From: Podarcis muralis
Lineage: Eukaryota
NCBI RefSeq assembly: GCF_964188315.1
Contig: NC_135658.1
Coordinates: 62,496,001 to 62,560,000 of the forward strand
DNA: 64,000 nt
Direction of reading: 5' to 3'
In this document: positions 11,663-63,111 of the stretch, one piece after another
Layout: each line of letters begins with the position of its first letter
Numbering within the stretch: position 1 is the stretch's first letter
Position numbers and translations under genes: made by a program
Notes under the pieces: generated by a model
The model's input: only the letters and a program-made list of their open reading frames with translations
What the model was told of the DNA's origin: nothing
The model's database searches: none

Positions 11663-12009
11663 AAAGGTAAAGGTACCCCTGCCCGTATGGGCCAGTCTTG
11701 ACAGACTCTGGGGTTGTGCGCCCATCTCACTGAAGAGGCCAGGGGCCAGCGCTGTCCGGAGACACTTCTGGGTCACGTGGCCAGCGTGACAAAGCTGCAT
11801 CTGGCGAGCCAGCGCAGCACACGGAACGCCGTTTACCTTCCCGCTGGTAAGCGATCCCTATTTATCTACTTGCACCCGGGGGTGCTTTCGAACTGCTAGG
11901 TTGGCAGGCGCTGGGACCGAGCAGCGGGAGCGCACCCCGCTGCGGGGATTCGAACCACCAACCTTTCGATCGGCAAGCCCTAGGCGCTGAGGCTTTTACC
12001 CACAGCGCC
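11663..12009 (-). mobile_element. Sauria SINE (Squam1), younger subfamily
   Basis: Reverse complement about 94% identical to 29259-29615; tRNA-derived head with B box, (ACCTTT)n-type tail. Confidence 0.92.
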
Positions 12010-13581
12010 GGCTAAAGGTGGCTTAACATGTTGCTTGAGACTTAAATACCATTGTAGACACAAGACATGTTGCTGAACATTTGCTCAGAATGATTCAGGC
12101 TTATGAGGAATTATGCGGAATTTACTGTAGAGTATGACTTTGCTACATGACCTTACTCTTAAAGGATACTGCAGAGAGTGGATTGCATCTATGTATCCTG
12201 GCTTTGTTGAAAATACTATAAGGGAGAAACAGCTAGTAGAAGGGGATGGGAACGGGGGGCTCTGAGCATAAACTATTCAGCACAATAAAACTGCTAATGT
12301 GTTGATGAAGAAAATCTGACATTAAGGTGACACTAAGGCACCCAGCAGAGACCAGTTGTTCAAGGGTGCAATCGTTTAGTCTATCTGTTCCATCAATTGA
12401 GCCTTCCACTAGTCCTGACCAGAAAAGTTCTAGATTCTATGTGCATCTGAGAAGGAGGCAGGCATTCTACTGCCCAGAAGAAGTGAACCCATGAGGAAAG
12501 AGCTATTGTTGTTTGATGCCTCTTCTCTTAACCCTTGGCTCAGTTGGGCTCCTGGCTTGTCTCTGTTGTGCAAGGTGCCTTTCATCTGCATTCTCTAATA
12601 TGCATGGGGAACCTTTAGCTCAGAGCTTTCCAGTCGGTGTGACATGGCACGTTAGTGTGTCTGCTGCAGTGTCCAGGTGTGTCACACAGATGTTCCTTGT
12701 GTTCCTCCTGGGACTGAAAAGAGGTTAGTTTAACCTCCAGTTTGCTAGTAAAACTGAATTACTGTGCTGCGAAATGATGTATGTCCAAAAAAGAGTGTCA
12801 TCAACATGAAAAGTTTGGAAAGCTCTGTCTCTGTTTTTAATTAACTGCATTTTTAATTGTTGTAACCCACCCTGGGACCTTAGGGTGAAGCACAAGTAAA
12901 AAATTAAAATTATACTCCTAAACAAACAAACAAAAACGAGGTGCAACAGAAAGGAAAGATATGCATTCTCATATAATTCACAACAATCCATAAATCAAAG
13001 TTCATATAAGTAATCAAGGACATCATAGCTCCATTCCTTCACACTACTCCATTGAATGCTAGTGCTTATCAAAAAAAAATCATGACTCATTTTTCCTCGC
13101 AAGAATTAGCCATAGCAACAATCATTCAGCAAAACAGAAAGTGCAGACAGAACTCCATTGCAACTCCCTACAAAGAATTGTGAGCATTGTGTCAATTACT
13201 ACATTATCTTCCTCAACAGGTGAACCCCCAAATATAGATACCAGAGTTACTGTAGTTCCCTGATTTCAGAAGTTACAGTGAGTCTTGTAGTATGCAAAAG
13301 CACCTAGGTAATATAACACTTTTATTCATCCCAAAGTCCAGAATCCATCCCTATTAGACTTATTTGTTGCAAGTCCAGCACCCATTATTCACTTTCATCC
13401 CAATGTTTTTTCTTGTCTGTCCACAGGTAAGCAGGATGCCATTCAACATACCCAGTAGGAAAGATGTTCTCCACTCCACTGTCCACAAGCAAGTTAGCTG
13501 TGACCAAATGGAATCTTACTTCTGTGCTCCTGTGATGTTTCTGTCTTTGGCCTGCTACGGTTTTTGATCCTTTGCAAAGTA

Positions 13582-13609
13582 CAGTGGTGCCTCGCAAGAT
13601 GAAATTAAT
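13582..13609 (+). mobile_element. Isolated left TIR of a pogo/Tigger-like MITE (left end of a composite element)
   Basis: CAGTGGTGCCTCGCAAGATGAAATTAAT matches 14037-14064 at 27/28; preceded by TA at 13580-13581. Confidence 0.85.
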
Positions 13610-13613
13610 ATGG

Positions 13614-13806
13614 ACCACCATATTCAATTGATCTAGGAAGACAAACTTATTAGAAACCATAAGTTCTGAACAAAAAGAGAACAATTCATTCTCTTTCTTT
13701 TGTTAACCCATCCATGATAAAAGAATGGAATACTTCTACTTCCACATAGGGATTTTGAATACAGCAATCCTTTGATAAACAACTTAGCCCTCTGCATTTA
13801 CCAACT
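13614..13806 (+). repeat. 193-bp dispersed duplication of 20091-20283
   Basis: Line-by-line comparison shows no mismatch; constant offset 6477. Confidence 0.95.
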
Positions 13807-14352
13807 GGCAGCATGGGGAGTTATTACAGTGCCAACATATGAATAAGAAACTGTTCACTGTTTTTGTGTCCTGCACTTCAAGCTAAACAATAAATCATTG
13901 CTCTAGCAGCATGGTAAGCTGCCCCTTAGGTGCAGCCTAATCTAAAGCATGTATTTTTTCCAGGTATGCAACTTTTGAATTTTTATGAGGCAAATGTGAG
14001 AATATTATGATGTGAACAATATCTGGTATGAAAATACAGTGGTGCCTCGCAAGACGAAATTAATTCGTTCCGCGAGTTTTTTCGTCTTGCCATTTTTTTC
14101 GTCTTGCGAAGCACGGTGTTGGAAAAGTTTTGGAAAAGCTTCAAAAATCACCAAAGTCTTCAAAAACCTCAAAAAAGGCTACCACACCGCGTGCTATGAG
14201 TTGCTCCTCGAAGTCAAGTCGCAACTGTATTAACGGTGTTAAGAAAAAGGAAACAAACTTGCAAGACATTTCCGTCTTGCGAAGCAAGCCCATAGGGAAA
14301 ATCGTCTTGCGAAGCAGCTCAAAAAACAAAAAACCCTTTCGTCTAGCGAGTT
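13801..14352 (+). repeat. 552-bp dispersed duplication of 52454-53005 (unique flank plus MITE)
   Basis: Colinear, constant offset 38653, about 15 substitutions, many at CpG. Confidence 0.95.
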
Positions 14353-14391
14353 TTTTGTCTTGCGAGGCATTCGTCTTGCGAGGTACCATTG
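14037..14391 (+). mobile_element. pogo/Tigger-like MITE, TCGCAAGACG subfamily
   Basis: TIRs CAGTGGTGCCTCGCAAGACGAA / TTCGTCTTGCGAGGTACCATTG (20/22), TA on both sides, internal CGTCTTGCGA repeats. Confidence 0.92.
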
Positions 14392-17220
14392 TATATAACA
14401 GATAGTAATGTAACAGATACCATGCAGTGATGAAAAAAAACCTTGTTGCTCTGCACATGTGTATTTGGTTTGGTGATGTTATAGAATCATTCACCTATTG
14501 TCATGTATTGATCGGAGCCTTCCATGCACACATAAGTTGGGGGTATTTGTAATGCAGTGTTATGGCACAGATGATATGGAAATATCTCTTGGTGCTGCTG
14601 CCCCTGGGACAATGTTGTGCTATTCATTCTGCAACTAGCTGAGCAGAGGGTTGCAAATATTTTACGCCAGCATTAATCCTGCCATAGCAGCAACCATGCA
14701 TGCATGGACTATAAGATTCTATGTTAAATTTTAGGCTTTCCCCATTTTACTATCTTCTACTGTTGATTTTTCCCTACAGTGAATAGTGTTACCGCACTCA
14801 TAAAACTGAATTATCTGAAAGCTTCTTGGCATAAGACAAATATTTGGATGTAAGAAAAAGATACTAACAATGAAATAGTTCAGATGTCACCCCTCCTCCC
14901 AGATTATTCAGGTGAACAGAAATGTCACCAAAGGATTTTCTTTTTATGTGTATGAAGAATGCTTTTCTAAGGCATAAATCTCATATATTGACATCAGCTG
15001 CAATTTTTCAAGTTTCTGTCTAATTTATCTTGTGCTGATTATACATCCCTCTGGTAGAGTAAATAACAACCATTAAATTGTTCTACAATATAATGGCATT
15101 GCTATGTCCTCAGTGCAAATCCGTAATACCTTCAAGCATGTAGATTTGATGGATCTTGCTGAGAAGTTAGTCCAGTGCCCATACATATCTATGGTAACAA
15201 TGGTAACGTTTATCAAGCAAGCAGATTCAAAATTAGAATTGCGTGTCGAGATTCCAAAACCACCCCCTCGTTGATGAATAAGACACAAGGAGACAGATAT
15301 TAGGTTAATGTTACTGGGCAGAAGAGATTATCTTCTATTGAGGCAGTGTAAGATAAAATAAAATGAGGGAAGGGGGGGGTAGTGTGTTTCTTTCCTCAAG
15401 ACCACTTGCATTTCCAGACAGCTCCTTATAACACATTATCATTGAAACCATTTCAATTGCTGAGTGGTCTAAGTATGGATGCCAAAGGCACACATCTCTT
15501 GCTGTTCAACACAAATGTGTGACATGGAGGTGGAGGCATTCTCTTCATGCTGGACCTAAATCATTTCAGCTTTTACACAGGACTTCATTTGTGTGATACT
15601 GCAAGTAAGTAAATGAAAACTTGCATTCTCTCTGCCCAGGTTAGTATCTTACAAAGGCACAATTTTACACGGGATGGCAAGTGCCCACCATGTAAAAATG
15701 AAGTTTTCTGTTACATCAGAACTATAGTCCAGCAACATCTGGAGGACCAGAGGTTCCCCACACCTAGTACACACCTTGAACCAGAATTTTGTTCCTGACC
15801 CCCCGCCCCCCAAGCCGCTGTGTGCTCCTGCTGTTAGACAGATTTGTACAACAACCTGAATCCCTTATGTAGCATTAAACTAAAGACAACAGGGCTGCTT
15901 GATGCTGAATATTCCATGTATGCTGCTTACTCTTGGAACACAACACTGAGATTGAAGACAGCACAGCAGGACTGACAGAAGATTAAAGGAAGTACAAAGA
16001 TGTTAAACCAGCTGAATATTCAGTCTGTTTAAACTATGCTTTTGTATCAATTTTGCAGAGGCCATATAGGCATTTCTGTTTCTCCTCCCTTCTCTCAAAT
16101 GAATCAAGAAACCATTCATATACCCTTTTATTCATAGGCCTCAGTGAGTGAAATGTAGCACAAAGCACAGCCTTAAGTCTTTGCACTCTGTGTTTGCTAT
16201 TGATCATTAAGAGAGAGAGAGAGATCTTACATACCCACCGCAGTGTGATTAGTTTGTACTTCTCTGACTTTATTGATCATGTGTCAGTAGAAATTTTTAG
16301 TAACAAAGTATGTTCTGACAACACACTTTAAATGAAATAGTTGACGGAAAATCTCTTTTAAAACTCAAATGTCAAAATACAGTTCAAGCATCCAGAAGAC
16401 ACATGTGCTAAAGCAAAAAATGGGAAAAGATAAGCATCTAAATAAGAGGGAAAGGATGCTGGAAACTAAGAGGAAAGTTTCAAAAGGCAAATTTAATCCC
16501 CCCCAAAGTAAAGTGCTGTTCTTTACATTCTTTTCCCCTCTCTCTCCCCACCCCAGAAGCTAGCTACAGTGAAAACTGTTCACCTTTCCTGTGCTACAAG
16601 GTCAGATCTGCTCATTACTTTATGCCTGAGCAGTGAGTGTATGGAACTATTGCAAAGAGAAGGTGAGCTGAGAATATGAAAAGGAAAGTGGAATCGGAAC
16701 AAAACGATAGGGCAGGTGTCTTAATGTTAAATCCAATGTAAATTAAACAGCTACAGGGCAGAGCCAAAATTTCCTCAGAAAATAATTTTCTATCCTTGTT
16801 TTAGAAGTTCTATCCTAGAGATTATTTGGTGAAATGGCCTCCCAAATCCATGAATTTTGGGTGCATCTGTGATATTGTTTGATAGTATTCTAATATTGTT
16901 GAAGGAATCAATGAGCTCATCTGCTTCTGCTTGTCGCTCTCCTCTCTTAGCCACCAGTATTAACTAACAATAGGGATTAATTAAATATGGTGTGGCCCAA
17001 CATTTATTGGAAGAGAGCATTCTCTTCCAACCCAGCCAGAAAATTCCACACACACCCAAATATTGACAAATTGCCCCTCTTAATTTTTGCTCCCCAAATA
17101 GCATGGACAGGTTGGGACAGCCACATTCACACAACCCTGTGGGGCAAATGCTTGGGAAAAACAATAGCTATTTTGATATGAACATGGTACCAAGGTATGC
17201 ACAGAAAGGTGAGGAAAGTA

Positions 17221-17842
17221 CTGTATTTTTCGCCCCATAGGGCACACCGCCCCATAGGACGCACCTAGTTTTTTTTTGGGGGGGGGAATAAAGGAAAAAA
17301 AATTCCCCCCCCCAGGCGCGGGGCTGGCGTGGGGGAAGCCTGAGCTTCCCCCCAAACCCAGCCCCGAGAACAGCCTGCTACCCGCAAGCCTAGGGAGGCC
17401 AGCGGTAAGTCGTACCGGTCTCCCCAGGCTTCGGAATGCAGGCAGCTCTGCGCAGCCATCGGGAGGTGGGCGCGACTTCGTGCCCGGCTCCGGATGGCTG
17501 CGCAGAGCTGCACTCACCCCGGGACAGCAGGCAGCTCTGCGCAGCCATCGGGAGGCGGGCGCGACTTCGCACCCCGCTCCGGATGGCTGCGCAGAGCTGT
17601 GCTCGCCTCGGGACTGCAGGCAGCTCTGCGCAGCCATCGGGAGGCGGGCGCGAAGTGGCGCCGGTCTCCCGAGGGTTGCACAGAGCTTCCTGAAGCCTGG
17701 AGAGTGAGAGGGGTCGGTGCGCACCGACCCCTCTCGCTCTCCAGGCTTCAGCAAAAGCCTGCATTCACCCCATAGGACACACACACATTTCCCCTTCGTT
17801 TTTGGAGGGGGAAAAGTGCGTCCTATAGGGCGAAAAATACGA
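17221..17842. mobile_element. Non-autonomous Tc1/mariner (Tc2/pogo-like) DNA transposon with internal 89-bp tandem hairpin units
   Basis: TIRs CTGTATTTTTCGCCCCATAGG / CCTATAGGGCGAAAAATACGA, TA at 17219-17220 and 17843-17844; units start at 17438, 17527, 17616. Confidence 0.85.
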
Positions 17843-18202: not shown

Positions 18203-18547
18203 ACTTAATGGCATTGGGTCCAGTTTGGTTCGTATCACTAAGCAAGTCCTGGTTTTTGCCTGCCCCAGCCCCAATATGGGTGAATACTGCTCCTTGCTAT
18301 GGTACGAGTGCAAGAAGAAAGCACAGAATCACACCATCCATTGGTTCTAGTTTACACATGGGAGTAATATATGACTTAATGGCATTGGGTCCAGTTTGGT
18401 TCGTATCACTAAGCAAGTCCTGGTTTTTGCCTGCCCCAGCCCCAATATGGGTGAATACTGCTCCTTGCTATGGTACAAGTACAAGAAGAAAGCACAGAAT
18501 CACACCATCCATTGGTTCTAGTTTACACATGGGAGTAATATATGACT
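18203..18547. repeat. Tandem duplication of a 171-bp unit (2 copies)
   Basis: 18203-18373 and 18374-18544 differ at 2 positions; ACT at 18203, 18374 and 18545. Confidence 0.95.
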
Positions 18548-20090: not shown

Positions 20091-20283
20091 ACCACCATAT
20101 TCAATTGATCTAGGAAGACAAACTTATTAGAAACCATAAGTTCTGAACAAAAAGAGAACAATTCATTCTCTTTCTTTTGTTAACCCATCCATGATAAAAG
20201 AATGGAATACTTCTACTTCCACATAGGGATTTTGAATACAGCAATCCTTTGATAAACAACTTAGCCCTCTGCATTTACCAACT
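20091..20283 (+). repeat. Probable donor copy of the 193-bp segment at 13614-13806
   Basis: Exact match; ends in CCAACT (20278-20283); embedded in unique sequence on both sides. Confidence 0.93.
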
Positions 20284-22749: not shown

Positions 22750-23118
22750 AGGTAAAAGGTAAAGGACCCCTGGAGGGTTAAGTCCAGTCAAAGGCGACTA
22801 TGGGGCTGCAGTGCTCAACTCGCTTTCAGGCCGAGGGAGTGGCATTTGTCCACAGACAGCTTTCTGGGTCCTGTGACCAGCATGACTAAACCGCTTCTGG
22901 TGCAACGGAACATTGTGACAGAAACCAGAGTGCACGGAAATGCGATCTACCTTCCTGTCTACCTATTTATCTACTCACACTGGTATGCTTTTGAATTGCT
23001 AGGTTGGCAGGAGCTGGGACAGAGCAATGGGAGCTCACCCCATCACATGGATTCAAACCGCCAACCTTCTGACTGGCAAGCCCAGGAGGCTCAGTGGTTT
23101 AGACCACAGCGCCACCTG
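22750..23118 (-). mobile_element. Sauria SINE (Squam1), older subfamily
   Basis: AAGGTAAAGGACCCC tail, CTGCTAGGTTGGCAGG-type core, GACCACAGCGCCACC head on the reverse strand. Confidence 0.9.
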
Positions 23119-25847
23119 CACATGTGGAGTACTCCAGCTTCACAATGCTGGACAGAGGTTGGAGTGATGCAGAGAGGTAAAGAAAAGCTTGTGGACTCAA
23201 CTGCCCCTGTGCACCCCTACCTGAGAAGTCTGCACTCACATCTGTGTGCCCAGGTCCCAGCATAACAATCATGTATTGTGATTGCTGCAGTGAACAGCCT
23301 TTCATTTCACAGCCCTAAAATGTCCCTGGGACTCTTGAAAGCTAGAAACCAAGAGAGAAAACATACTCTGACTCTTGATTGCTTTGCTGGGTTAGAGAGC
23401 TCTGTGCCCTGGGCGGCAGCTGCTACGCTCTCTGACCCAGTAAAGTATCTCAGAGCTGCTGTTACTGCTGCATTTGTAGTGCCACCTTCTTTTGGCAACA
23501 GCAGTGGCTGGATGTGAAATAGGATGGCTGTGCTGTGCTGCTTTGGCATCATTAACTACCAGAAATTGGAAGGCTATTGCTTAGCAGCACTGCTAGCGTG
23601 AACTCAGAGCAGCAGTTTGGGTTCACCTGGAGTTAAAAAGACCATCTCAACTGCATGATCCCCCTTATCCCCCTTAACCCACAGTGTTGGCTAAAAGGGG
23701 ACAACAATAGAGGCACAAGCCTTCCTCGCATGTACAACAGGTGTGCAAAGCCAATAAAAGGTGGCATTGCTCTCAGTGCTGGCTGCACTAGAGGCTCCCT
23801 ACCTAGGCCATGGTAGCTTCCCTTCTGTTCTAACCTCTGCTGGCAGCCCCGGTTCTCTATCCTCAAGTGCATCTTTGCATTCCTCCACTACAAATTTAGA
23901 ATGAAGGCCTGGTGAAGTTTGGGCTGAATGTAGCTACTCCACAATGCAAGGCTCACTGAGTTGGTCTGCCCTTGGAGTCTAATGGAATTGGATGGATTCC
24001 TGAATGCTTTGGGGGATTTTCTGGTTGACATGGCTGGTGCTCCTATTGAGATCCTTGTCTCACTGCAGAATGGAGAGATGCATAGAGTGATTGGCAGGAT
24101 TGCTCCTGCGTGCACTGGCCATTGCAGTGGAGCATTTACGTCACTTTGGTATTCCAGTGACCTTCATGTGATAAAGCAGGAGGGCCAGTAGCTAGAGTTC
24201 AGGTGGTGTAAAACTCAGTCCAGCCTCACCAAACATGGGTGAGGCTGCACCACCATGCCTACCACAGAGTGGTACTGGCAGTGAAGAAAGCTTACATTCC
24301 CTCAAGTAGTCATCTGGCAGAGCTCTGCTGAGTGTAGAGGCTATCTTGACACACTGCATCTTGACTGTGGCCTAGAAAAATAGCTGATCTTCTCAGGAAA
24401 GGAAAGGAAAGTGTAGCTGGTGGCAGTGGGCAGAAAAGCAGACAGAGATATAGAAGATGCTGCAGGCTGGATGCAATTCTTGTGAGGGCTGTTGAAGCAG
24501 CAGAAGACTCCAAGAGCTGGAATGAATGATCACTATTAGCACATTGAACACAAAGGCACTTCTGGGATTGTTAGATAAACTATATTAGGAAATCCCTGCA
24601 ACAGTAAGGTCCAATATACTGCCAAACCTGTGTGAGTCTACTGCTAAATTGGCAGCCACAGAAGCCTAGTTAAAGATATGAATTATTACACTTTGAAACT
24701 ACATATTATATTCTTTCCCCAAGGTTCCTTTAAATATCCCTGTTTATCTATGTGATTAAACGGCCCGTTGTTTGTTGCCTACACGTCAGTATGATTGGCT
24801 GGAACTCACCAGGGCTTAGACAGAAGTTCCTAATGCAGACATGCTTTCGGCACTTTCCTTTTAATTTTGGTTGCGCAAGTGCACTGTTGATTTACATTGC
24901 AATTACAACTGCAAAGACAACATGATTTAAAAGAAGGGACGGGTCTTGGAGTATGCTTTATTTCTAAACTGAGTCGCATCCTTTGACCTGCAACCCCTCT
25001 AGCTATATTTTCAAATGTGTGCATGTGGGTGGTGCTTACTCAGCGGTAAGAAGATCCCATACTCATGCTTTCGTTTTCAGATTTTTCAGCAGTTCCCCTT
25101 CTCTAACTGATTCATGAGGGAGGGCGTGAAAAAGGAGCCACTGCCCATGTGAAAACAAAAGAAAAACAATAGCCTGCTTTTGCAAGAAGCAAACAATTTT
25201 GCAAAATGGAGGAGTGGGTTTCAGCACAGCAGTACCCGACATTACATTCGTGAGGGGAAACAGCCCACATGTTCCAGGACTGAGAATGAATACCCCAGAA
25301 AAAAAGCATTGCTGCTAATTCCTTGAACATTTTTATGAAGCCTGCCTCCCCAAAGTACCATTTCAGGTTGGGTGGAGATTCCTTCCTTTTCCAGCTGTGA
25401 ATTCTTGAGAGCTTTCATTTCATTCCCATCAAAAATAGCTTTCATGAATATAGTTCTTTAGCTTTGCAAGTTTCAGATTTTATATTAGGCTGCACGGTGC
25501 TGGCAATTCCTCGCACAGGGACAGCCAAAGAGTGGAAATCAAACTCAAGTTACGTAAAACAAAGCTGGTTCTCCATACTATGACAGGCGGTATTATCACG
25601 GTGACTCGTTATAAATCAAAGTCGGCTAATTAGGGAATAAGTAAGTAAGTGCAATTCATGGAAATTTCATTCTATGTAAACAGCAGGGTGCGTGTGGTCA
25701 GACTGCTAGCAGGCAAAGCATCATTCTAGAGGGATGTATTCTTGAAGGTGTCATTACAAAATCTTAGAAAGGCATCCTGAATAGTTGAATTTAGCACACC
25801 ATTTGCAGTTATCCTGATGGTAATTATTAGTCACTGTACTTTAAAAA

Positions 25848-26197
25848 AAGGTAAAGGACCCCTGACAGTTGCAGATGACTCTGGGGTTGCGGCGCTCATC
25901 TCGCTTTACAGGCCGAGGGAGCCGGCATTTGTCCGCAGACAGTTTTTCCGGGTCATGTGCATAGCATGACTAAGCCGCTTCTGGTGCAACGGAACACCAA
26001 AACCAGAGCAGCGCACGGAAATGCCGTTTACCTTCCCGCCAGAGATACCTATTTATCTACTTGCACTTTTTGGCGTGCTTTCGAACTGCTAGGTTGGCAG
26101 GAGCTGGGACTGAGCAACGGGAGCTCACCCCGTTGCGGGGATTCGAACCGCAAACCTTCTGATCGGCAAGCCCAAGAGGCTCAGTCGTTTAGACCAC
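25848..26197 (-). mobile_element. Sauria SINE (Squam1), older subfamily, slightly 5'-truncated
   Basis: Same diagnostic blocks as 22750-23118, including B box (GGATTCGAACC on plus). Confidence 0.9.
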
Positions 26198-28592
26198 TTA
26201 CTGTTAAATGTGTTTCCTATTATGACACAGAGAGATATACATAAACATTTGTGCATGTGTCCAGCCTTAAAATGTGCTGCTACTATAGTGGTTTGAGAAG
26301 TAGTTGGCCTGCTAGGACAATACTTGTTTTCTACAGTACAAAAGGCATCCCAGATCCCTTGCATCCCTTGCATCCCAGATGGAGTAGGACTGCCCATCAG
26401 CTACATGGAAGTAGTCCCATATACCTAGCTCCAGCATAAACATGGCTAATGAAAGGAGAAGCAGAGGGGATTTGAATGGGAGGTGGAGAATTGCTATACA
26501 GCTTCCATAAGATGGTGTTGTTGCACAAACAGAAGCTTGTGCTGCAACAGCTACAGTTGAGGGAGGTTCATACTGTAAGGGAATTTGGCGAAATAGCTGC
26601 ACTGACTGATAGAAAAGACTTTCTACTCCGCCAGGATACAAAGAGCAGAGAAATAATGATGCAAAATTAAAACCGTAGCATATGGGTTCGAGGCTTTATC
26701 TTAGTTTAGCATTCTACCCTGATCTCAGTTTGCCTTGGCTTCACAGTGTTATTGTTTGTGGGTAAAACAATACCAACTCAGGGAAGAAGATTATTGCTGT
26801 ACAACAAGGCTTTTAATCATCAGGATTGCAGTGAATTGGAACTAAGTTGATTAAAGAGATATATGACATGAGAAATGTAGTAGGAACGTAATAAAGAGAG
26901 AGAGTGTGAGAGCGCAATGCACATCTCCTTCCACTGTCCTCGTTTCTATGATTTCTTCTAACCGCTGCAAGGCAATTACAAGGAGCTGTATTTCCCCCCT
27001 ATAATAACAATTCCTATTACTGTTCTGTTAAGCATTTAGAAAAGTAAAAATACTTTCAAACAGCAGAGCACTAAGATTACAAAAAATAATAATAAATACA
27101 ATTTGACCTTCAGCAATCTCAGGAGTAGAACTCTATAGAACATAACCTATATGAAGGTTCTTAGAAGAAATCCCTGTTAAATCCGAGCAGCAAGACACAC
27201 ACATCATTTCAAAAAGCAATCTCATTAGGAAAGCATAGGGAGGACAGAAGTTTGCTCAAAGGATGAAGGAAAAACCTTGCATCTTCAGAGATTTGGGTGA
27301 GCAAGTCATTTTACCTGCTATGTGTTCTTGGAGAAGCATTGCTTTCTGCAACGAGATGAATCCCTTAAGGGGAGCCAGAGATGCTTATATTTTTCTGGTC
27401 ACAAAGATGTCAAGTGCTGGGAGTTGAAAGAAACAGGAATTGACACGAAGAAAAGCTTTATTGGTTGTATAAACAATAATGAGTGCTCTCCAAAACACGG
27501 TGTGTGCAGCTCTACTTTATCCATTAGAAAAGAAGAAGAGGAATAGGGCTAGCTGCAGATAAGACTACATTGGTGGGAAAGACAGGATACTCTGTGTCTT
27601 GGGTCAACCCCTTAGGGCCATCTAGGGCTTCAATGCTGTGCTCCACCTTGTTCTACCCAATTCTGCACTCTGCTGGTTTTTCCCCTCAGAACCTAAATAA
27701 CTACTTGATACCTAGTTCCTCATCCCTTGCCCAGCTTTTCTTGTTGAATATTCACAGGGATAATTCCAATACAGGTTCTGCTCACTCCCTCTAATACTGA
27801 ACTCAGTAACACTGCTCAACAGGACAGAAGCCCAAAAGGGATTTGCTGAGAATTAACATACTTGGATGACTCCCCAAGTAAGCAGAGATTCAGAAAACCT
27901 GGAAAACCCAAGAGGGGTGGGTGGGGTGGAATTCCCACATAAGGCTTAGAACACAATTGCATGTCCCTGTGATGTATGCAAGCTTCCCCCATTCTCTGTA
28001 GCAATCTATTTGGACCAGGACTCACACAACTGACTTTCCAAAGGCCCCTGACTGTGTATAGGGGTATATGGAAGAATGGGGAAAGAGAGTACTAGGGCTC
28101 AGAACAAAAGATGAGGAATGGTAAGAGCTGAAAGAGAAATAGTGGAGAAGGCATGGACAGAGGCAAGGAGGTGGGAGTGGCAGGAATAACAGAAAAAGAA
28201 GAGCCATGTAAAACAAGGGGCACAGTAGGAAGTGAGAAAGATGGAGTCAAACAGAGTGATAGTGGGTGGTAGGCAAGCAGGTGAGGAGTTGGCCACTAAA
28301 CTCTTTAAATCAAGGATAACCTTTGGTCCCAAGGGTCACATTCTCCCTTGGCCAATCTTCAGGGGCTGCATGTGTGTGGCCAAAAGTCCCAGACCCCATT
28401 CCCCAGTTGATCCATGCAGGTCAGCTGAGAAGAGGGAGTTATTCGCTCCTCTGTCCTCCCCAAATGATCAATGTGCTACTGGGAAGGGAGCGATCTGCAT
28501 CTCCATCAGGGCACTGGGCTTCATCCATCCACAGCTGTGTCTGTTTTCTTTTTATGTCACTGGTTGGGTTAGGGGTGGGATAGAACAAAATT

Positions 28593-29096
28593 TAGACAGC
28601 ATCTTAAAAAGTAGAGACATCACCTTGCCAACAAAGGTCCGTATAGTAAAAGCTATGGTTTTCCCAGTAGTGATGTATGGAAGTGAAAGCTGGACCATAA
28701 AGAAGGCTGATCGCCGAAGAATTTATGCTTTTGAATTATGGTGCTGGAGGAGACTCTTGAGAGTCCCATGGACTGCAAGAAGATCAAGCCTATCCATTCT
28801 TAAGGAAATCAGCCCTGAGTGCTCACTAGAAGGACAGATCGTGAAGCTGCGGCTCCAATACTTTGGCCACCTCATGAGAAGAGTAGACTCCCTGGAAAAG
28901 ACCCTGATGTTGGGAAAGATGGAGGGCACAAGGAGAAGGGGACAACAGAGGATGAGATGGTTGGATAGTGTTCGCAAAGCTACCAGCATGAGTTTGACCA
29001 AACTGTGGGAGGCAGTGGAAGATAGAAGTGCCTGGCGTGCTCTGGTCCATGGGGTCACGAAGAGTCGGACATGACTAAACGACTAAAAAACAACAA
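28593..29096 (+). mobile_element. Bov-B (RTE clade) LINE, 5'-truncated 3' fragment
   Basis: Translates to LDSILKSRDITLPTKVRIVKAMVFPVVMYGSESWTIKK..LVHGVTKSRT; ACTAAACGACT tail; possible TSD AGAACWAAATT (28582-28592, 29097-29107). Confidence 0.95.
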
Positions 29097-29258: not shown

Positions 29259-29615
29259 GTGGGACGCGGGTGGCGCTGTGGGTAAAAGTCTCAGCGCCTA
29301 GGGCTTGCCGATCGAAAGGTCGGCGGTTCGAATCCCCACGGCGGGGTGCGCTCCCGTTGTTCGGTCCCAGCGCCTGCCAACCTAGCAGTTCGAAAGCACC
29401 CCCGGGTGTAAGTAGATAAATAGGGACCGCTTACTAGCGGGAAGGTAAACGGCGTTTCCGTGTGCGGCTCTGGCTCGCCAGATGCAGCTTGTCACGCTGG
29501 CCACATGACCCGGAAGTGTCTCTGGACAGCGCTGGCCCCCGGCCTCTTGAGTGAGATGGGCGCACAACCCTAGAGTCTGTCAAGACTGGCCCGTACGGGC
29601 AGGGGTACCTTTACT
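29259..29615 (+). mobile_element. Full-length Sauria SINE (Squam1), younger subfamily
   Basis: Head GGGACGCGGGTGGCGCTGTGG, B box GGTTCGAATCC (29325-29335), perfect 12-bp TSD TATATCGCTAAC (29247-29258, 29616-29627). Confidence 0.95.
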
Positions 29616-38959: not shown

Positions 38960-39124
38960 NNNNNNNNNNNNNNNNNNNNNNNNNNNNNNNNNNNNNNNNN
39001 NNNNNNNNNNNNNNNNNNNNNNNNNNNNNNNNNNNNNNNNNNNNNNNNNNNNNNNNNNNNNNNNNNNNNNNNNNNNNNNNNNNNNNNNNNNNNNNNNNNN
39101 NNNNNNNNNNNNNNNNNNNNNNNN
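38960..39124. other. Assembly gap (165 N)
   Basis: Run of N. Confidence 1.
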
Positions 39125-52453: not shown

Positions 52454-53005
52454 CCAACTGGCAGCATGGGGAGTTATTACAGTGCCAACATATGAATAAG
52501 AAACTCTTCACTGTTTTTGTGTCCTGCACTTCAAGCTAAACAATAAATCATTGCTCTAGCAGCATGGTAAGCTGCCCCTTAGGTGCAGCCTAATCTAAAG
52601 CATGTATTTTTTCCAGGTATGCAACTTTTGAACTTTTACAAGGCAAATGTGAGAATATTATGATGTGAACAATATCTGGTATGAAAATACAGTGGTGCCT
52701 CGCAAGACAAAATTAATTCGTTCCGCGAGTTTTTTCGTCTTGCGATTTTTTTCGTCTTGCGAAGCACGGTGTCGGAAAAGTTTTGGAAAAGCTTCAAAAA
52801 TCACCAAAGTCTTCAAAAACCTCAAAAAAGGCTACCACACCGCGTGCTATGAGTTGCTCCTCGAAGTCAAGTCGCAACTGTATTAACGGTTTTAAGAAAA
52901 AGGAAACAAACTTGCAAGATGTTTCCATCTTGCAAAGCAAGCCCATAGGGAAAATCGTCTTGCGAAGCAACTCAAAAAACCAAAAACCCTTTCGTCTTGC
53001 GAGTT
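52454..53005 (+). repeat. Probable donor copy of the segment at 13801-14352
   Basis: About 97% identical, starts at CCAACT (52454-52459). Confidence 0.93.
52690..53005 (+). mobile_element. pogo/Tigger-like MITE, TCGCAAGACG subfamily, lacking the right TIR
   Basis: Left TIR after TA at 52688-52689; homology to 14037-14391 stops about 39 bp before the right end. Confidence 0.9.
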
Positions 53006-61878: not shown

Positions 61879-62828
61879 TATAACTGGATATGGAACAACT
61901 GATTCGTTCAAAATTGGGAAAGGAGTACGGCAAGGCTGTATATTGTCCCCCTGCTTATTTAACTTATATGCAAAATTCATCATGCAAAAGGCTGGGCTGG
62001 ATGAATCCCAAGCTGGAATTAAGATCGCCAGAAGAAATATCAACAACCTCAGATATGCAGATGACACAACCTTGATGGCAGAAAGTGAGGAGGAATTAAA
62101 GAACCTTTTAATGAGGGTGAAAGAAGAGAGCGCAAAATATGGTCTGAAGCTCAACATCAAAAAAACGAAGATCATGGCCACTGGTCCCATCACCTCCTGG
62201 CAAATAGAAGGGGAAGAAATGGAGGCAGTGAGAGATTTTACTTTCTTGGGCTCCATGATCACTGCAGATGGTGACAGCAGTCACAAAATTAAAAGACGCC
62301 TGCTCCTTGGGAGAAAGGCGATGGCAAACTTACGACAGCATCTTAAAAAGCAGAGACATCACCTTACCAACAAAGGCCCGTATAGTTAAAGCCATGGTTT
62401 TCCCAGTAGTGATGTATGGAAGTGAGAGCTGGACCATAAAGAAGGCTGATCGCCGAAGAATTGATGCTTTTGAATTATGGTGCTGGAGGAGACTCTTGAG
62501 AGTCCCATGGACTGCAAGAAGATCAAATGGATCCATTCTGAAGGAAATCAGCCCTGAGTGCTCACTGGAAGGACAGATTGTGAAGCTGAGGCTCCAATAC
62601 TTTGGCCACCTCATGAGAAGAGAAGACTCCCTGGAAAAGACCCTGATGCTGGGAAAGATGGAGGGCACAAGGAGAAGGGGACGACAGAGGACGAGATGGC
62701 TGGACAGTGTTCTCAAAGCTACAAACATGAGTCTGACCAAACTGTGGAAGGCAGTGGAAGACAGGAGTGCCTGGCGTGCTCTGGTCCATGGGGTCACGAA
62801 GAGTCGGACACGACTAAACGACTAAACA
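61879..62828 (+). mobile_element. Bov-B (RTE clade) LINE, 5'-truncated, with RT domain
   Basis: GVRQGCILSPCLFNLY and NNLRYADDTTL motifs; one frameshift near 62330; ends HGVTKSRTRLND with ACTAAAC tail. Confidence 0.96.
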
Positions 62829-63111
62829 AAAAAACACAAACATATTTAAATAACTAGGTTTAAATGCATTTTCTTTCAAACTAAGACTTTCTCAATGTAT
62901 TTTTCTTTAAAATGTTCTAATGTATTTTGGCACTTTTTAAAAGCTGAGATATATGGTGGCATATTCAGGCAGTGCAAAAGCAAGTGGATAACTAAGTGCT
63001 CTTGTGCATGTTAGTCTGGGACCTGTGGATACGTTTATGGTGGAATTCACAAAGATGAAATTCCTCAAGTATCCCTAAGGTCTGTCAAGATAAGTTCACA
63101 AGCATAACACA

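What the first reader, a model, noticed from the sequence alone, without database searches (positions are those of the whole stretch)
13582..14391. TIR-bounded mosaic element that captured two pieces of local DNA via microhomology template switching
Seen, in order: TA; 28-bp MITE left end (13582-13609); 4-bp filler ATGG; exact 193-bp copy of 20091-20283; switch at CCAACT (13801-13806), the hexamer that ends the first donor and begins the second; 552-bp copy of 52454-53005 (236 bp unique flank plus a MITE); the right MITE end (14353-14391) that the 52.7-kb copy lacks; TA. Known: gap repair (SDSA) after Tc1/mariner excision, and FoSTeS/MMBIR, produce filler DNA with microhomology junctions. Inference: a break at a resident MITE was repaired by invading the homologous MITE 38.7 kb away, copying out into its flank, jumping to 20.28 kb, and rejoining the left TIR. 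The result is an 810-bp Pack-type pogo element with both TIRs and TA ends, which in principle could be mobilised with host DNA. The two donors are 32 kb apart, so the join may record a chromatin contact.
Basis: partly seen in the sequence, partly recalled or inferred. Interest (0 to 1): 0.82.

Follow-up and report, generated by a model that had tools for sequence, protein, structure and literature searches.

The report
Small transposon patched with nearby DNA
A tiny jumping-DNA element in a wall lizard had most of its left part replaced with copies of two stretches lying 6.5 and 38.7 kb away on the same chromosome, a clean example of a repair process already described in many animals.

Summary
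13582-14391 is a TA-flanked unit. In order it holds a 28-bp left MITE end, ATGG, an exact 193-bp copy of 20091-20283, and a 552-bp, 97.3% copy of 52454-53005. The last is 236 bp of unique flank plus 316 bp of a MITE. A 39-bp right MITE end follows, which the 52.7-kb copy lacks. The two copied pieces overlap by CCAACT.

Contigs of public runs settle the polarity. A related species (organism B) has a precise empty site here, with 812 bases missing and a single TA. It carries both donor stretches inside long contigs. In three samples of the window's species, contigs break exactly at 13801 and 13806, as expected if both contexts exist. Depth gives two genomic copies of each cargo piece, so the chimera has not spread.

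The best reading is repair of a break in, or excision of, a resident MITE. Synthesis started on the homologous MITE 38.7 kb away, ran into its flank, switched at a 6-bp microhomology to the 20-kb site, and was end-joined to the left stub.

This matches the single-copy, cis-biased, gap-filling Pack-TIRs that Tan et al. 2021 described in 100 animal genomes, so it is a new member of a known kind. Three things are not shown: a simple resident MITE stage, pogo membership, and independent bridging of the left junction. Earlier first-reader notes of this scan report other Pack-TIR-like elements in this genome.

The parts
13580..13581 (+). Left TA target-site duplication
   Evidence: Sequence. The organism B contig joins 13578 to 14391 with 3 ambiguous letters, skipping 812 bases = 810-bp element + one TA.
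13582..13609 (+). 28-bp stub of the left MITE end (22-nt TIR plus 6 nt)
   Evidence: Matches the TIR pattern with 1 mismatch, a CpG-type C>T at 13600. BLAST matches it to 14031-14064 and 52684-52717.
13610..13613 (+). ATGG filler, untemplated or of unknown template
   Evidence: Differs from both the MITE continuation (TCGT) and the bases before donor 1 (GCAA).
13614..13806 (+). Exact 193-bp copy of 20091-20283
   Evidence: 100% over 193 bp. Word depth 88 against 42 for single-copy flank in X15.
13801..13806 (+). CCAACT microhomology at the switch between the two donors
   Evidence: Present at the end of donor 1 (20278-20283) and the start of donor 2 (52454-52459). Contigs of X15, X1 and X9 end at 13806 and begin at 13801.
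13807..14036 (+). Copy of the unique flank left of the 52.7-kb MITE (with the CCAACT: 13801-14036 = 52454-52689), including that MITE's TA at 14035-36
   Evidence: 4 mismatches in 236 bp. Depth 72 against 42 in X15.
14037..14391 (+). Complete 355-bp MITE. 14037-14352 is alike to 52690-53005; 14353-14391 is the right end that the 52.7-kb copy lacks
   Evidence: TIRs at 14037-14058 (+) and 14370-14391 (-) match in 20/22 positions. 11 mismatches in 316 bp. Eight CGTCTTGCGA-like motifs. Summed depth 1-3 million.
14392..14393 (+). Right TA target-site duplication
   Evidence: Sequence; empty site in organism B.
20091..20283 (+). Donor 1, 6.5 kb to the right of the chimera
   Evidence: In organism B the stretch lies at 1754-1946 of a 4566-nt contig with 0 differences, so it is ancestral in its own context.
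52454..52689 (+). Donor 2: unique flank of the 52.7-kb MITE
   Evidence: In organism B the stretch lies at 786-1021 of a 1284-nt contig that runs on at both sides.
52690..53005 (+). MITE copy lacking its last 39 bp; proposed homologous entry point for repair synthesis

Best explanation
A MITE with TA target duplication, from a family of tens of thousands of copies, inserted at the TA at 13580 after the split from the related species sampled here. A double-strand break then removed most of its left part. The cause was either transposase excision followed by interrupted gap repair, or a break inside the element. The right-hand broken end still carried the right part of the MITE. It invaded the homologous MITE copy 38.7 kb away on the same chromosome and was extended leftwards through that copy. 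Because the template was ectopic, extension continued 236 bp into that copy's unique flank. The nascent strand came off, re-annealed through the 6-nt microhomology CCAACT at 20278-20283, and was extended another 193 bp. It came off again and was end-joined, with four extra bases (ATGG), to the 28 bp left of the element's left end. The product is a single-copy Pack-type element: left TIR stub, 429 bp of host cargo from two donors, then a whole MITE. Shown: the anatomy, the polarity (the chimera is derived and the donors are ancestral), the canonical TA insertion site, and two copies of the cargo in the genome. Inferred: the order of the template switches, the kind of initial break, and the existence of a simple resident MITE before the event.
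For: Exact anatomy and the 6-bp overlap at the donor switch. Two separate donor-to-target copies ending at the same hexamer would be a coincidence, so 13.6 kb is the junction-bearing, derived locus. Organism B: one 1403-nt contig joins 13578 to 14391 (a precise empty site with one TA). The 193-bp and 236-bp stretches lie inside 4566-nt and 1284-nt contigs that continue on both sides. In X15, X1 and X9 (organism A, three studies) the contigs stop at 13806 and start at 13801. That branch pattern is absent from organism B. In X15 the extra depth in bins 13746-13833 fits a junction unitig plus the two donor contexts. Depth 88 and 72 against 42 means two copies of each cargo piece. Derived changes on the chimera's side are few: 13853 G, 14091 C, 14120 T and 14268 A. 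Against them, 0/193 versus 4/236 mismatches is not significantly different (p=0.13), so one event suffices. At sites where the family is polymorphic, the chimera and the 52.7-kb copy agree at 14081, 14161, 14193 and 14272 but differ at 14317, 14328 and 14345. That is as expected if the copied tract ends near 14282-14316 and the rest is the resident element's own right end. The mechanism and its cis bias are established for animals: Tan et al. 2021, PMC8277862.
Against: No sample shows the simple-MITE stage; the only outgroup seen has an empty site. A change-point in mismatch density is not significant (p about 0.06). The 193-bp piece has 0 mismatches against 2.7% for the whole 552 bp (p=0.016), although most of the excess is CpG decay inside the MITE. 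No listed contig bridges the left junction. In X1 and X9 the 193-bp contig runs on into the 20-kb context without a branch at 13614. Only 1 of 3 sampled junction words was found, in two runs. All read evidence comes from short de Bruijn contigs, not long reads.
Confidence: 0.6

Rival explanations
1. The chimera was formed in the same way but at another MITE, or during replication-fork stalling (the FoSTeST model). It was then cut out and pasted into the TA at 13580 as a unit, leaving no copy at its birthplace.
For: Organism B has a clean empty site and no simple MITE. The unit has both TIRs and a TA duplication. Tan et al. propose this route for Pack-TIRs that lack an orthologous plain TE.
Against: Cargo depth is two copies only, so there is no sign of any transposition of the chimera. 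Both donors lie within 40 kb in cis, as expected for in-place gap filling. It requires an extra step.
Confidence: 0.17
2. Two separate repair events took place. An older one brought in the 552-bp piece. A later break at its left edge was filled from 20 kb, using CCAACT for annealing.
For: 0/193 mismatches against 15/552 (p=0.016).
Against: Comparing unique DNA only gives 0/193 against 4/236 (p=0.13). Three of those four differences are derived in the 52-kb copy, because organism B has the chimera's letters at 13980, 13986 and 13987. So the chimera's own lineage shows 1 change in 236 bp against 0 in 193 bp.
Confidence: 0.15
3. Assembly artefact: a chimeric join of reads from three loci through the high-copy MITE.
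For: No listed contig bridges the left junction, and junction words were found in few runs.
Against: The contig branch pattern at 13801/13806 appears in three independent samples and is absent from organism B. The depth bumps in X15 fit junction unitigs at both junctions. Flank contigs in X15, X1 and X9 all run into a MITE end at 13582 and, in X15 and X1, at 14391. A junction inside unique DNA (193 bp to 236 bp, at CCAACT) is not what a repeat-driven misjoin gives.
Confidence: 0.04
4. Reverse polarity: 13.6-14.4 kb is the original, and pieces of it were copied to 20 kb and 52 kb.
For: The MITE at 14037 is complete, while the one at 52.7 kb is truncated.
Against: Organism B lacks the 13.6-kb unit precisely and has both other stretches in long contigs. 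It also needs two independent copies that share one boundary.
Confidence: 0.02

Closest known systems
Single-copy Pack-TIRs of animals formed by gap filling (Tan et al. 2021, Nat Commun 12:4280, PMC8277862)
   Same: A TIR element whose interior is replaced by non-TE DNA copied from the same chromosome. It shows cis bias, microhomology at a breakpoint, a short de novo insertion at the other, a single copy, and a TcMariner host element, as in their gibbon Pack-Tigger1 example.
   Different: The filler comes from two donors joined to each other, and one donor was reached through a second copy of the same MITE, so the cargo includes a whole MITE. The microhomology is 6 bp against their median of 2 bp. 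The donors are at 6.5 and 38.7 kb, while most of their cases are under 15 kb. The left breakpoint is near the terminus (28 of 355 bp), which in their scheme points to excision-induced rather than internal-break repair. The outgroup has no plain TE, unlike 94% of their primate cases.
Interrupted (abortive) gap repair with filler DNA after excision of cut-and-paste transposons such as P element, Ac/Ds and Mu (from my own knowledge, not checked here; Tan et al. cite P-element gap repair for the cis bias)
   Same: Repair synthesis from a homologous or ectopic template, dissociation, re-annealing at short homologies, and an end-joined finish. The products are internally deleted elements carrying foreign filler.
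   Different: Those cases were seen experimentally. Here the process is inferred from one fixed product in a lizard, and excision as the trigger is not shown.
FoSTeS / MMBIR complex rearrangements
   Same: Serial template switches guided by microhomology among sites tens of kb apart.
   Different: Here the first switch used about 300 bp of true homology between two MITE copies. The product is a small insertion bounded by transposon ends, not a large copy-number change.
Pack-MULEs and multicopy Pack-TIRs
   Same: TIR-bounded host DNA with a target-site duplication.
   Different: There is no amplification: depth gives two genomic copies of each cargo piece, the donor and this one. No coding cargo was seen.

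Membership tests
Pack-TIR (Tan et al. 2021 sense) | Both ends are the TIRs of one TIR transposon family | tested here: met
   13582-13603 (+) and 14370-14391 (-) match the 22-nt TIR with 1 and 2 mismatches; 0 matches expected by chance.
Pack-TIR (Tan et al. 2021 sense) | Target-site duplication flanking the whole unit | tested here: met
   TA at 13580-81 and 14392-93. The organism B contig has the site with one TA and 812 bases fewer.
Pack-TIR (Tan et al. 2021 sense) | The interior is non-TE DNA with a parental copy elsewhere in the genome, and the parent is the older one | tested here: met
   193 bp at 100% and 236 bp at 98.3% identity to 20091-20283 and 52454-52689. Both lie in long contigs of organism B, which lacks the chimera. 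That the two stretches are not themselves repeats follows from 2x depth.
Gap-filling (transposition-independent) subtype | Plain TE without cargo at the orthologous site of an outgroup | tested here: not met
   Organism B has an empty site. Only one outgroup was laid, so a closer one may still show the plain TE.
Gap-filling (transposition-independent) subtype | Cis bias and microhomology at breakpoints | tested here: met
   The donors are 6.5 and 38.7 kb away in the same window. There is 6-bp microhomology at the donor-donor switch, and none at the left join, which has a 4-bp insertion instead.
Multicopy (mobilised) Pack-TIR | Further copies of the chimera at other sites | tested here: not met
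   Word depth in X15 is 88 and 72 for the cargo against 42 for the flank. X1 is similar: 18 and 17 against about 10 for the left flank.
Tc1/mariner superfamily, pogo/Tigger group, non-autonomous (MITE) | TA target-site duplication | tested here: met
Tc1/mariner superfamily, pogo/Tigger group, non-autonomous (MITE) | TIRs shared with an autonomous element that encodes a pogo-type DDE transposase | not testable with these tools
   There is no autonomous copy in the window and no eukaryotic repeat library or genome to search. The likeness of CAGTGGTGCCTCG to Tigger ends is recalled from memory only.
Tc1/mariner superfamily, pogo/Tigger group, non-autonomous (MITE) | Short, non-coding, high copy number | tested here: met
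   355 bp. The summed depth of 1-3 million against 42 implies tens of thousands of copies at 90% likeness or more, although the tool warns that summed depth is no exact copy number.

The most novel reading that the evidence does not exclude
In a genome with tens of thousands of near-identical MITEs, broken MITEs may routinely use other nearby MITE copies as ectopic repair templates and read out into their flanks. MITE-to-MITE repair would then be a regular source of short-range duplications of host DNA, and its chimeras would record which loci were in contact at the time of repair. This element and the first-reader note s1-153013 (a MITE duplicated with 49 bp of host flank and an extra TIR, unchecked) would be two instances of it.
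Probability: 0.25. Interest if true: 0.55.

Novelty: new member of a known kind. Interest (0 to 1): 0.36.

Why it matters
This is an unusually legible natural record of multi-step break repair in a vertebrate. Every junction can be read to the base, both donors are still in place within 40 kb, and a related species keeps the empty site. It shows that a second copy of the same MITE can serve as the entry point that drags unrelated host DNA into a transposon. That adds a route to Pack-TIR formation beyond plain microhomology capture. It does not change the known picture, because gap-filling Pack-TIRs with cis bias and microhomology are documented across animals. There is no sign that this one carries a gene, is expressed, or has moved.

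Tried and rejected
(1) Change-point test for a conversion-tract boundary within the 552 bp. The best split is at 14267, with permutation p about 0.06, which is not significant. Only the pattern at family-polymorphic sites hints at a boundary near 14282-14316.
(2) A first version of that script timed out.
(3) Difference in age between the two cargo pieces. It is not significant once only unique DNA is compared (p=0.13).
(4) Search for more MITE copies in the window, to build a family consensus. There are none beyond the three ends listed. Majority letters were taken from the laid contigs instead.
(5) Direct test of the left junction with a 60-nt query. It yielded only 3 sampled words, and two runs hold one of them, so the result is weak.
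(6) Gene context. Four long ORFs have no Pfam match, and no gene was identified in the window.
(7) Earlier notes of this scan at this place: none. Searching them by words on filler or template switching also gave none.
(8) ATGG as a snap-back copy of CCAT at 13620-13623. A 4-mer match that near is expected by chance about one time in four, so it was dropped.
(9) Macro-transposon origin at the 52-kb locus. Rejected because nothing like the stub or the 193-bp piece lies left of 52454, and the organism B contig runs on there.

Full report
**What is there**

In order:

| Coordinates | Feature |
|---|---|
| 13580-81 | TA |
| 13582-13609 | 28-bp copy of the left MITE end, with one CpG-type change at 13600 |
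| 13610-13613 | ATGG, which matches neither neighbour's source |
| 13614-13806 | Exact copy of 20091-20283 (193/193) |
| 13801-14352 | Copy of 52454-53005 (552 bp, 15 mismatches, no gaps) |
| 14353-14391 | MITE right end, which the 52.7-kb copy lacks |
| 14392-93 | TA |

- The two copied stretches overlap by CCAACT, which ends one donor and begins the other.
- The 552-bp piece consists of 236 bp of unique flank (4 mismatches) plus 316 bp of MITE (11 mismatches).
- The unit therefore holds a complete 355-bp MITE (14037-14391, TIRs matching in 20/22 positions) preceded by 429 bp of host cargo and a solitary left TIR.
- The 22-nt TIR occurs nowhere else in the window, against 0 matches expected by chance.
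- The MITE carries eight copies of a CGTCTTGCGA-like motif. One lies in each TIR and six more are in direct orientation.

**Is it real, and which copy is derived?**

I laid Logan contigs of four public runs on 13350-14650. Three runs were from the window's species (organism A; X15, X1 and X9, from three studies). One was from a relative (organism B, X13).

In organism B:
- A single 1403-nt contig joins 13578 to 14391. The 812 missing bases are the 810-bp unit plus one TA, so this is a precise empty site.
- The 193-bp stretch lies inside a 4566-nt contig with no differences.
- The 236-bp stretch lies inside a 1284-nt contig that continues on both sides.
- So both donors are older than the chimera.

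In organism A:
- In all three samples the contig for the 193-bp piece ends at 13806 and the next one starts at 13801. This is the branch pattern expected when both the donor contexts and the chimeric junction exist.
- In X15 the extra depth in bins 13746-13833 and 13614-13657 agrees, by my arithmetic, with short junction unitigs plus the donor contexts.
- Word depth in X15 is 42 for the flanks, 88 for the 193-bp piece and 72 for the 236-bp piece. That means two genomic copies of each, so the chimera has not been amplified.
- The MITE part collects a summed depth of 1-3 million, which implies tens of thousands of family copies.

The left junction (stub/ATGG/193 bp) is the weak point:
- No listed contig bridges it.
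- The left-flank contigs stop at 13599-13602.
- In X1 and X9 the 193-bp contig runs on into the 20-kb context without a branch at 13614.
- A plausible technical reason is that 31-mers holding under about nine flank bases plus the TIR collide with other copies of a family this large. The 64-nt unique junction path would then be clipped as a tip.
- A 60-nt query across the junction had only three sampled words. Two runs of organism A from two studies (X25 and X6) hold one of them.
- This is weak support, so long reads are needed.

**One event or two?**

- The 193-bp piece has no mismatch, while the 552-bp piece has 2.7% (p=0.016). In unique DNA alone the contrast is 0/193 against 4/236 (p=0.13).
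- Organism B polarises the four flank differences. It has C at 13853, like the 52-kb copy. It has the chimera's letters at 13980, 13986 and 13987.
- So the chimera's own lineage has 1 change in 236 bp. One event is enough.

**Where does the copied tract end?**

- A change-point test is not significant (best split at 14267, p about 0.06).
- The majority letters of the family come from the contigs laid on the MITE (table 3). Most differences prove to be private CpG decay in one copy or the other.
- At sites where the family itself is polymorphic, the two copies agree at 14081, 14161, 14193 and 14272 but differ at 14317, 14328 and 14345.
- This suggests, without proving, that the tract copied from 52.7 kb ends between about 14282 and 14316. 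On that reading the rest, including the 39-bp right end, is the resident element's own.

**Mechanism**

The best reading has these steps:
1. A MITE inserted at the TA at 13580 after the split from organism B.
2. A double-strand break removed most of its left part. The left breakpoint lies at 28 of 355 bp. In the scheme of Tan et al. 2021, a near-terminal breakpoint points to excision followed by interrupted gap repair rather than an internal break.
3. The right-hand end invaded the homologous MITE 38.7 kb away. It was extended through that copy's left end and 236 bp into its flank.
4. The strand dissociated, re-annealed at CCAACT at 20278-20283, and was extended 193 bp.
5. It was end-joined to the 28-bp stub with ATGG added.

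The anatomy, the polarity, the TA site and the copy number are shown. The order of steps, the trigger and the plain-MITE stage are inferred.

**Rivals**

- The same chemistry happened elsewhere and the chimera was then transposed as a unit. The empty site in organism B allows this. The two-copy depth and the cis donors argue against it.
- Two successive events.
- Misassembly.
- Reverse polarity, which organism B excludes.

**Comparison with what is known**

Tan et al. 2021 (PMC8277862) identified 370 Pack-TIRs in 100 animal genomes. They concluded that single-copy ones arise mostly by gap filling. Their evidence was a cis bias (57% within 15 kb), microhomology at breakpoints (median 2 bp), short de novo insertions at other breakpoints, and TcMariner hosts among the examples. 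This element fits that class.

It differs in these particulars:
- It has a two-donor filler.
- Entry was through a second copy of the same MITE, so a whole MITE is part of the product.
- The microhomology is 6 bp.
- The left breakpoint is near the terminus.
- The outgroup has an empty site rather than a plain TE.

'Pogo' membership could not be tested, because there is no autonomous element and no repeat library. Only the TA duplication, the TIRs, the short non-coding body and the high copy number were met.

Earlier first-reader notes of this scan list other Pack-TIR-like elements in this genome, a wall lizard. One of them is a MITE duplicated with host flank and an extra TIR. I did not check those notes.

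**Verdict**

This is a clean, datable new member of a known kind, of moderate interest.

Noticed in passing
window 52690-53005 and 53006 onward: The 52.7-kb MITE lacks its last 39 bp and stops right after an internal CGTCTTGCGAGTT motif. In organism B the contig holding the 236-bp flank runs on for 785 nt of unlike sequence past the MITE start. The MITE therefore seems to be absent there too, which would make it a second young insertion in this window.
   Followed up: partly
window 14037-14391: The MITE family is enormous: summed contig depth is 1-3 million against 42 for single-copy DNA. It shows many internal-deletion variants, seen as joints from 14114-14117 to 14161-14261 in both species. 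It carries eight CGTCTTGCGA-like motifs, which could be transposase binding sites or slippage-prone repeats.
   Followed up: partly
window 28586-29093 and 62325-62832: A 508-bp direct repeat pair at 93% identity, 34 kb apart. It overlaps ORFs of 280 and 185 aa that have no Pfam match, so it is probably another interspersed repeat.
   Followed up: partly
window 11667-12009 and 29272-29614 (inverted); also 22754-23107, 25846-26197: A repeat family with copies at 75-94% identity in both orientations.
   Followed up: no
window 17438-17687 and 18203-18547: Two tandem arrays. Their units are about 89 bp (88% alike) and about 171 bp (99% alike). The first lies inside a 281-aa ORF with no Pfam match.
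   Followed up: no
window 38960-39124: A run of 165 N (assembly gap or mask).
   Followed up: no
window 13600 and 13853: Possible polymorphism within organism A. X1 and X9 flank contigs carry three unaligned letters after 13599, possibly C instead of T at 13600. X9 shows C at 13853 and G at 13867 across the full depth.
   Followed up: no
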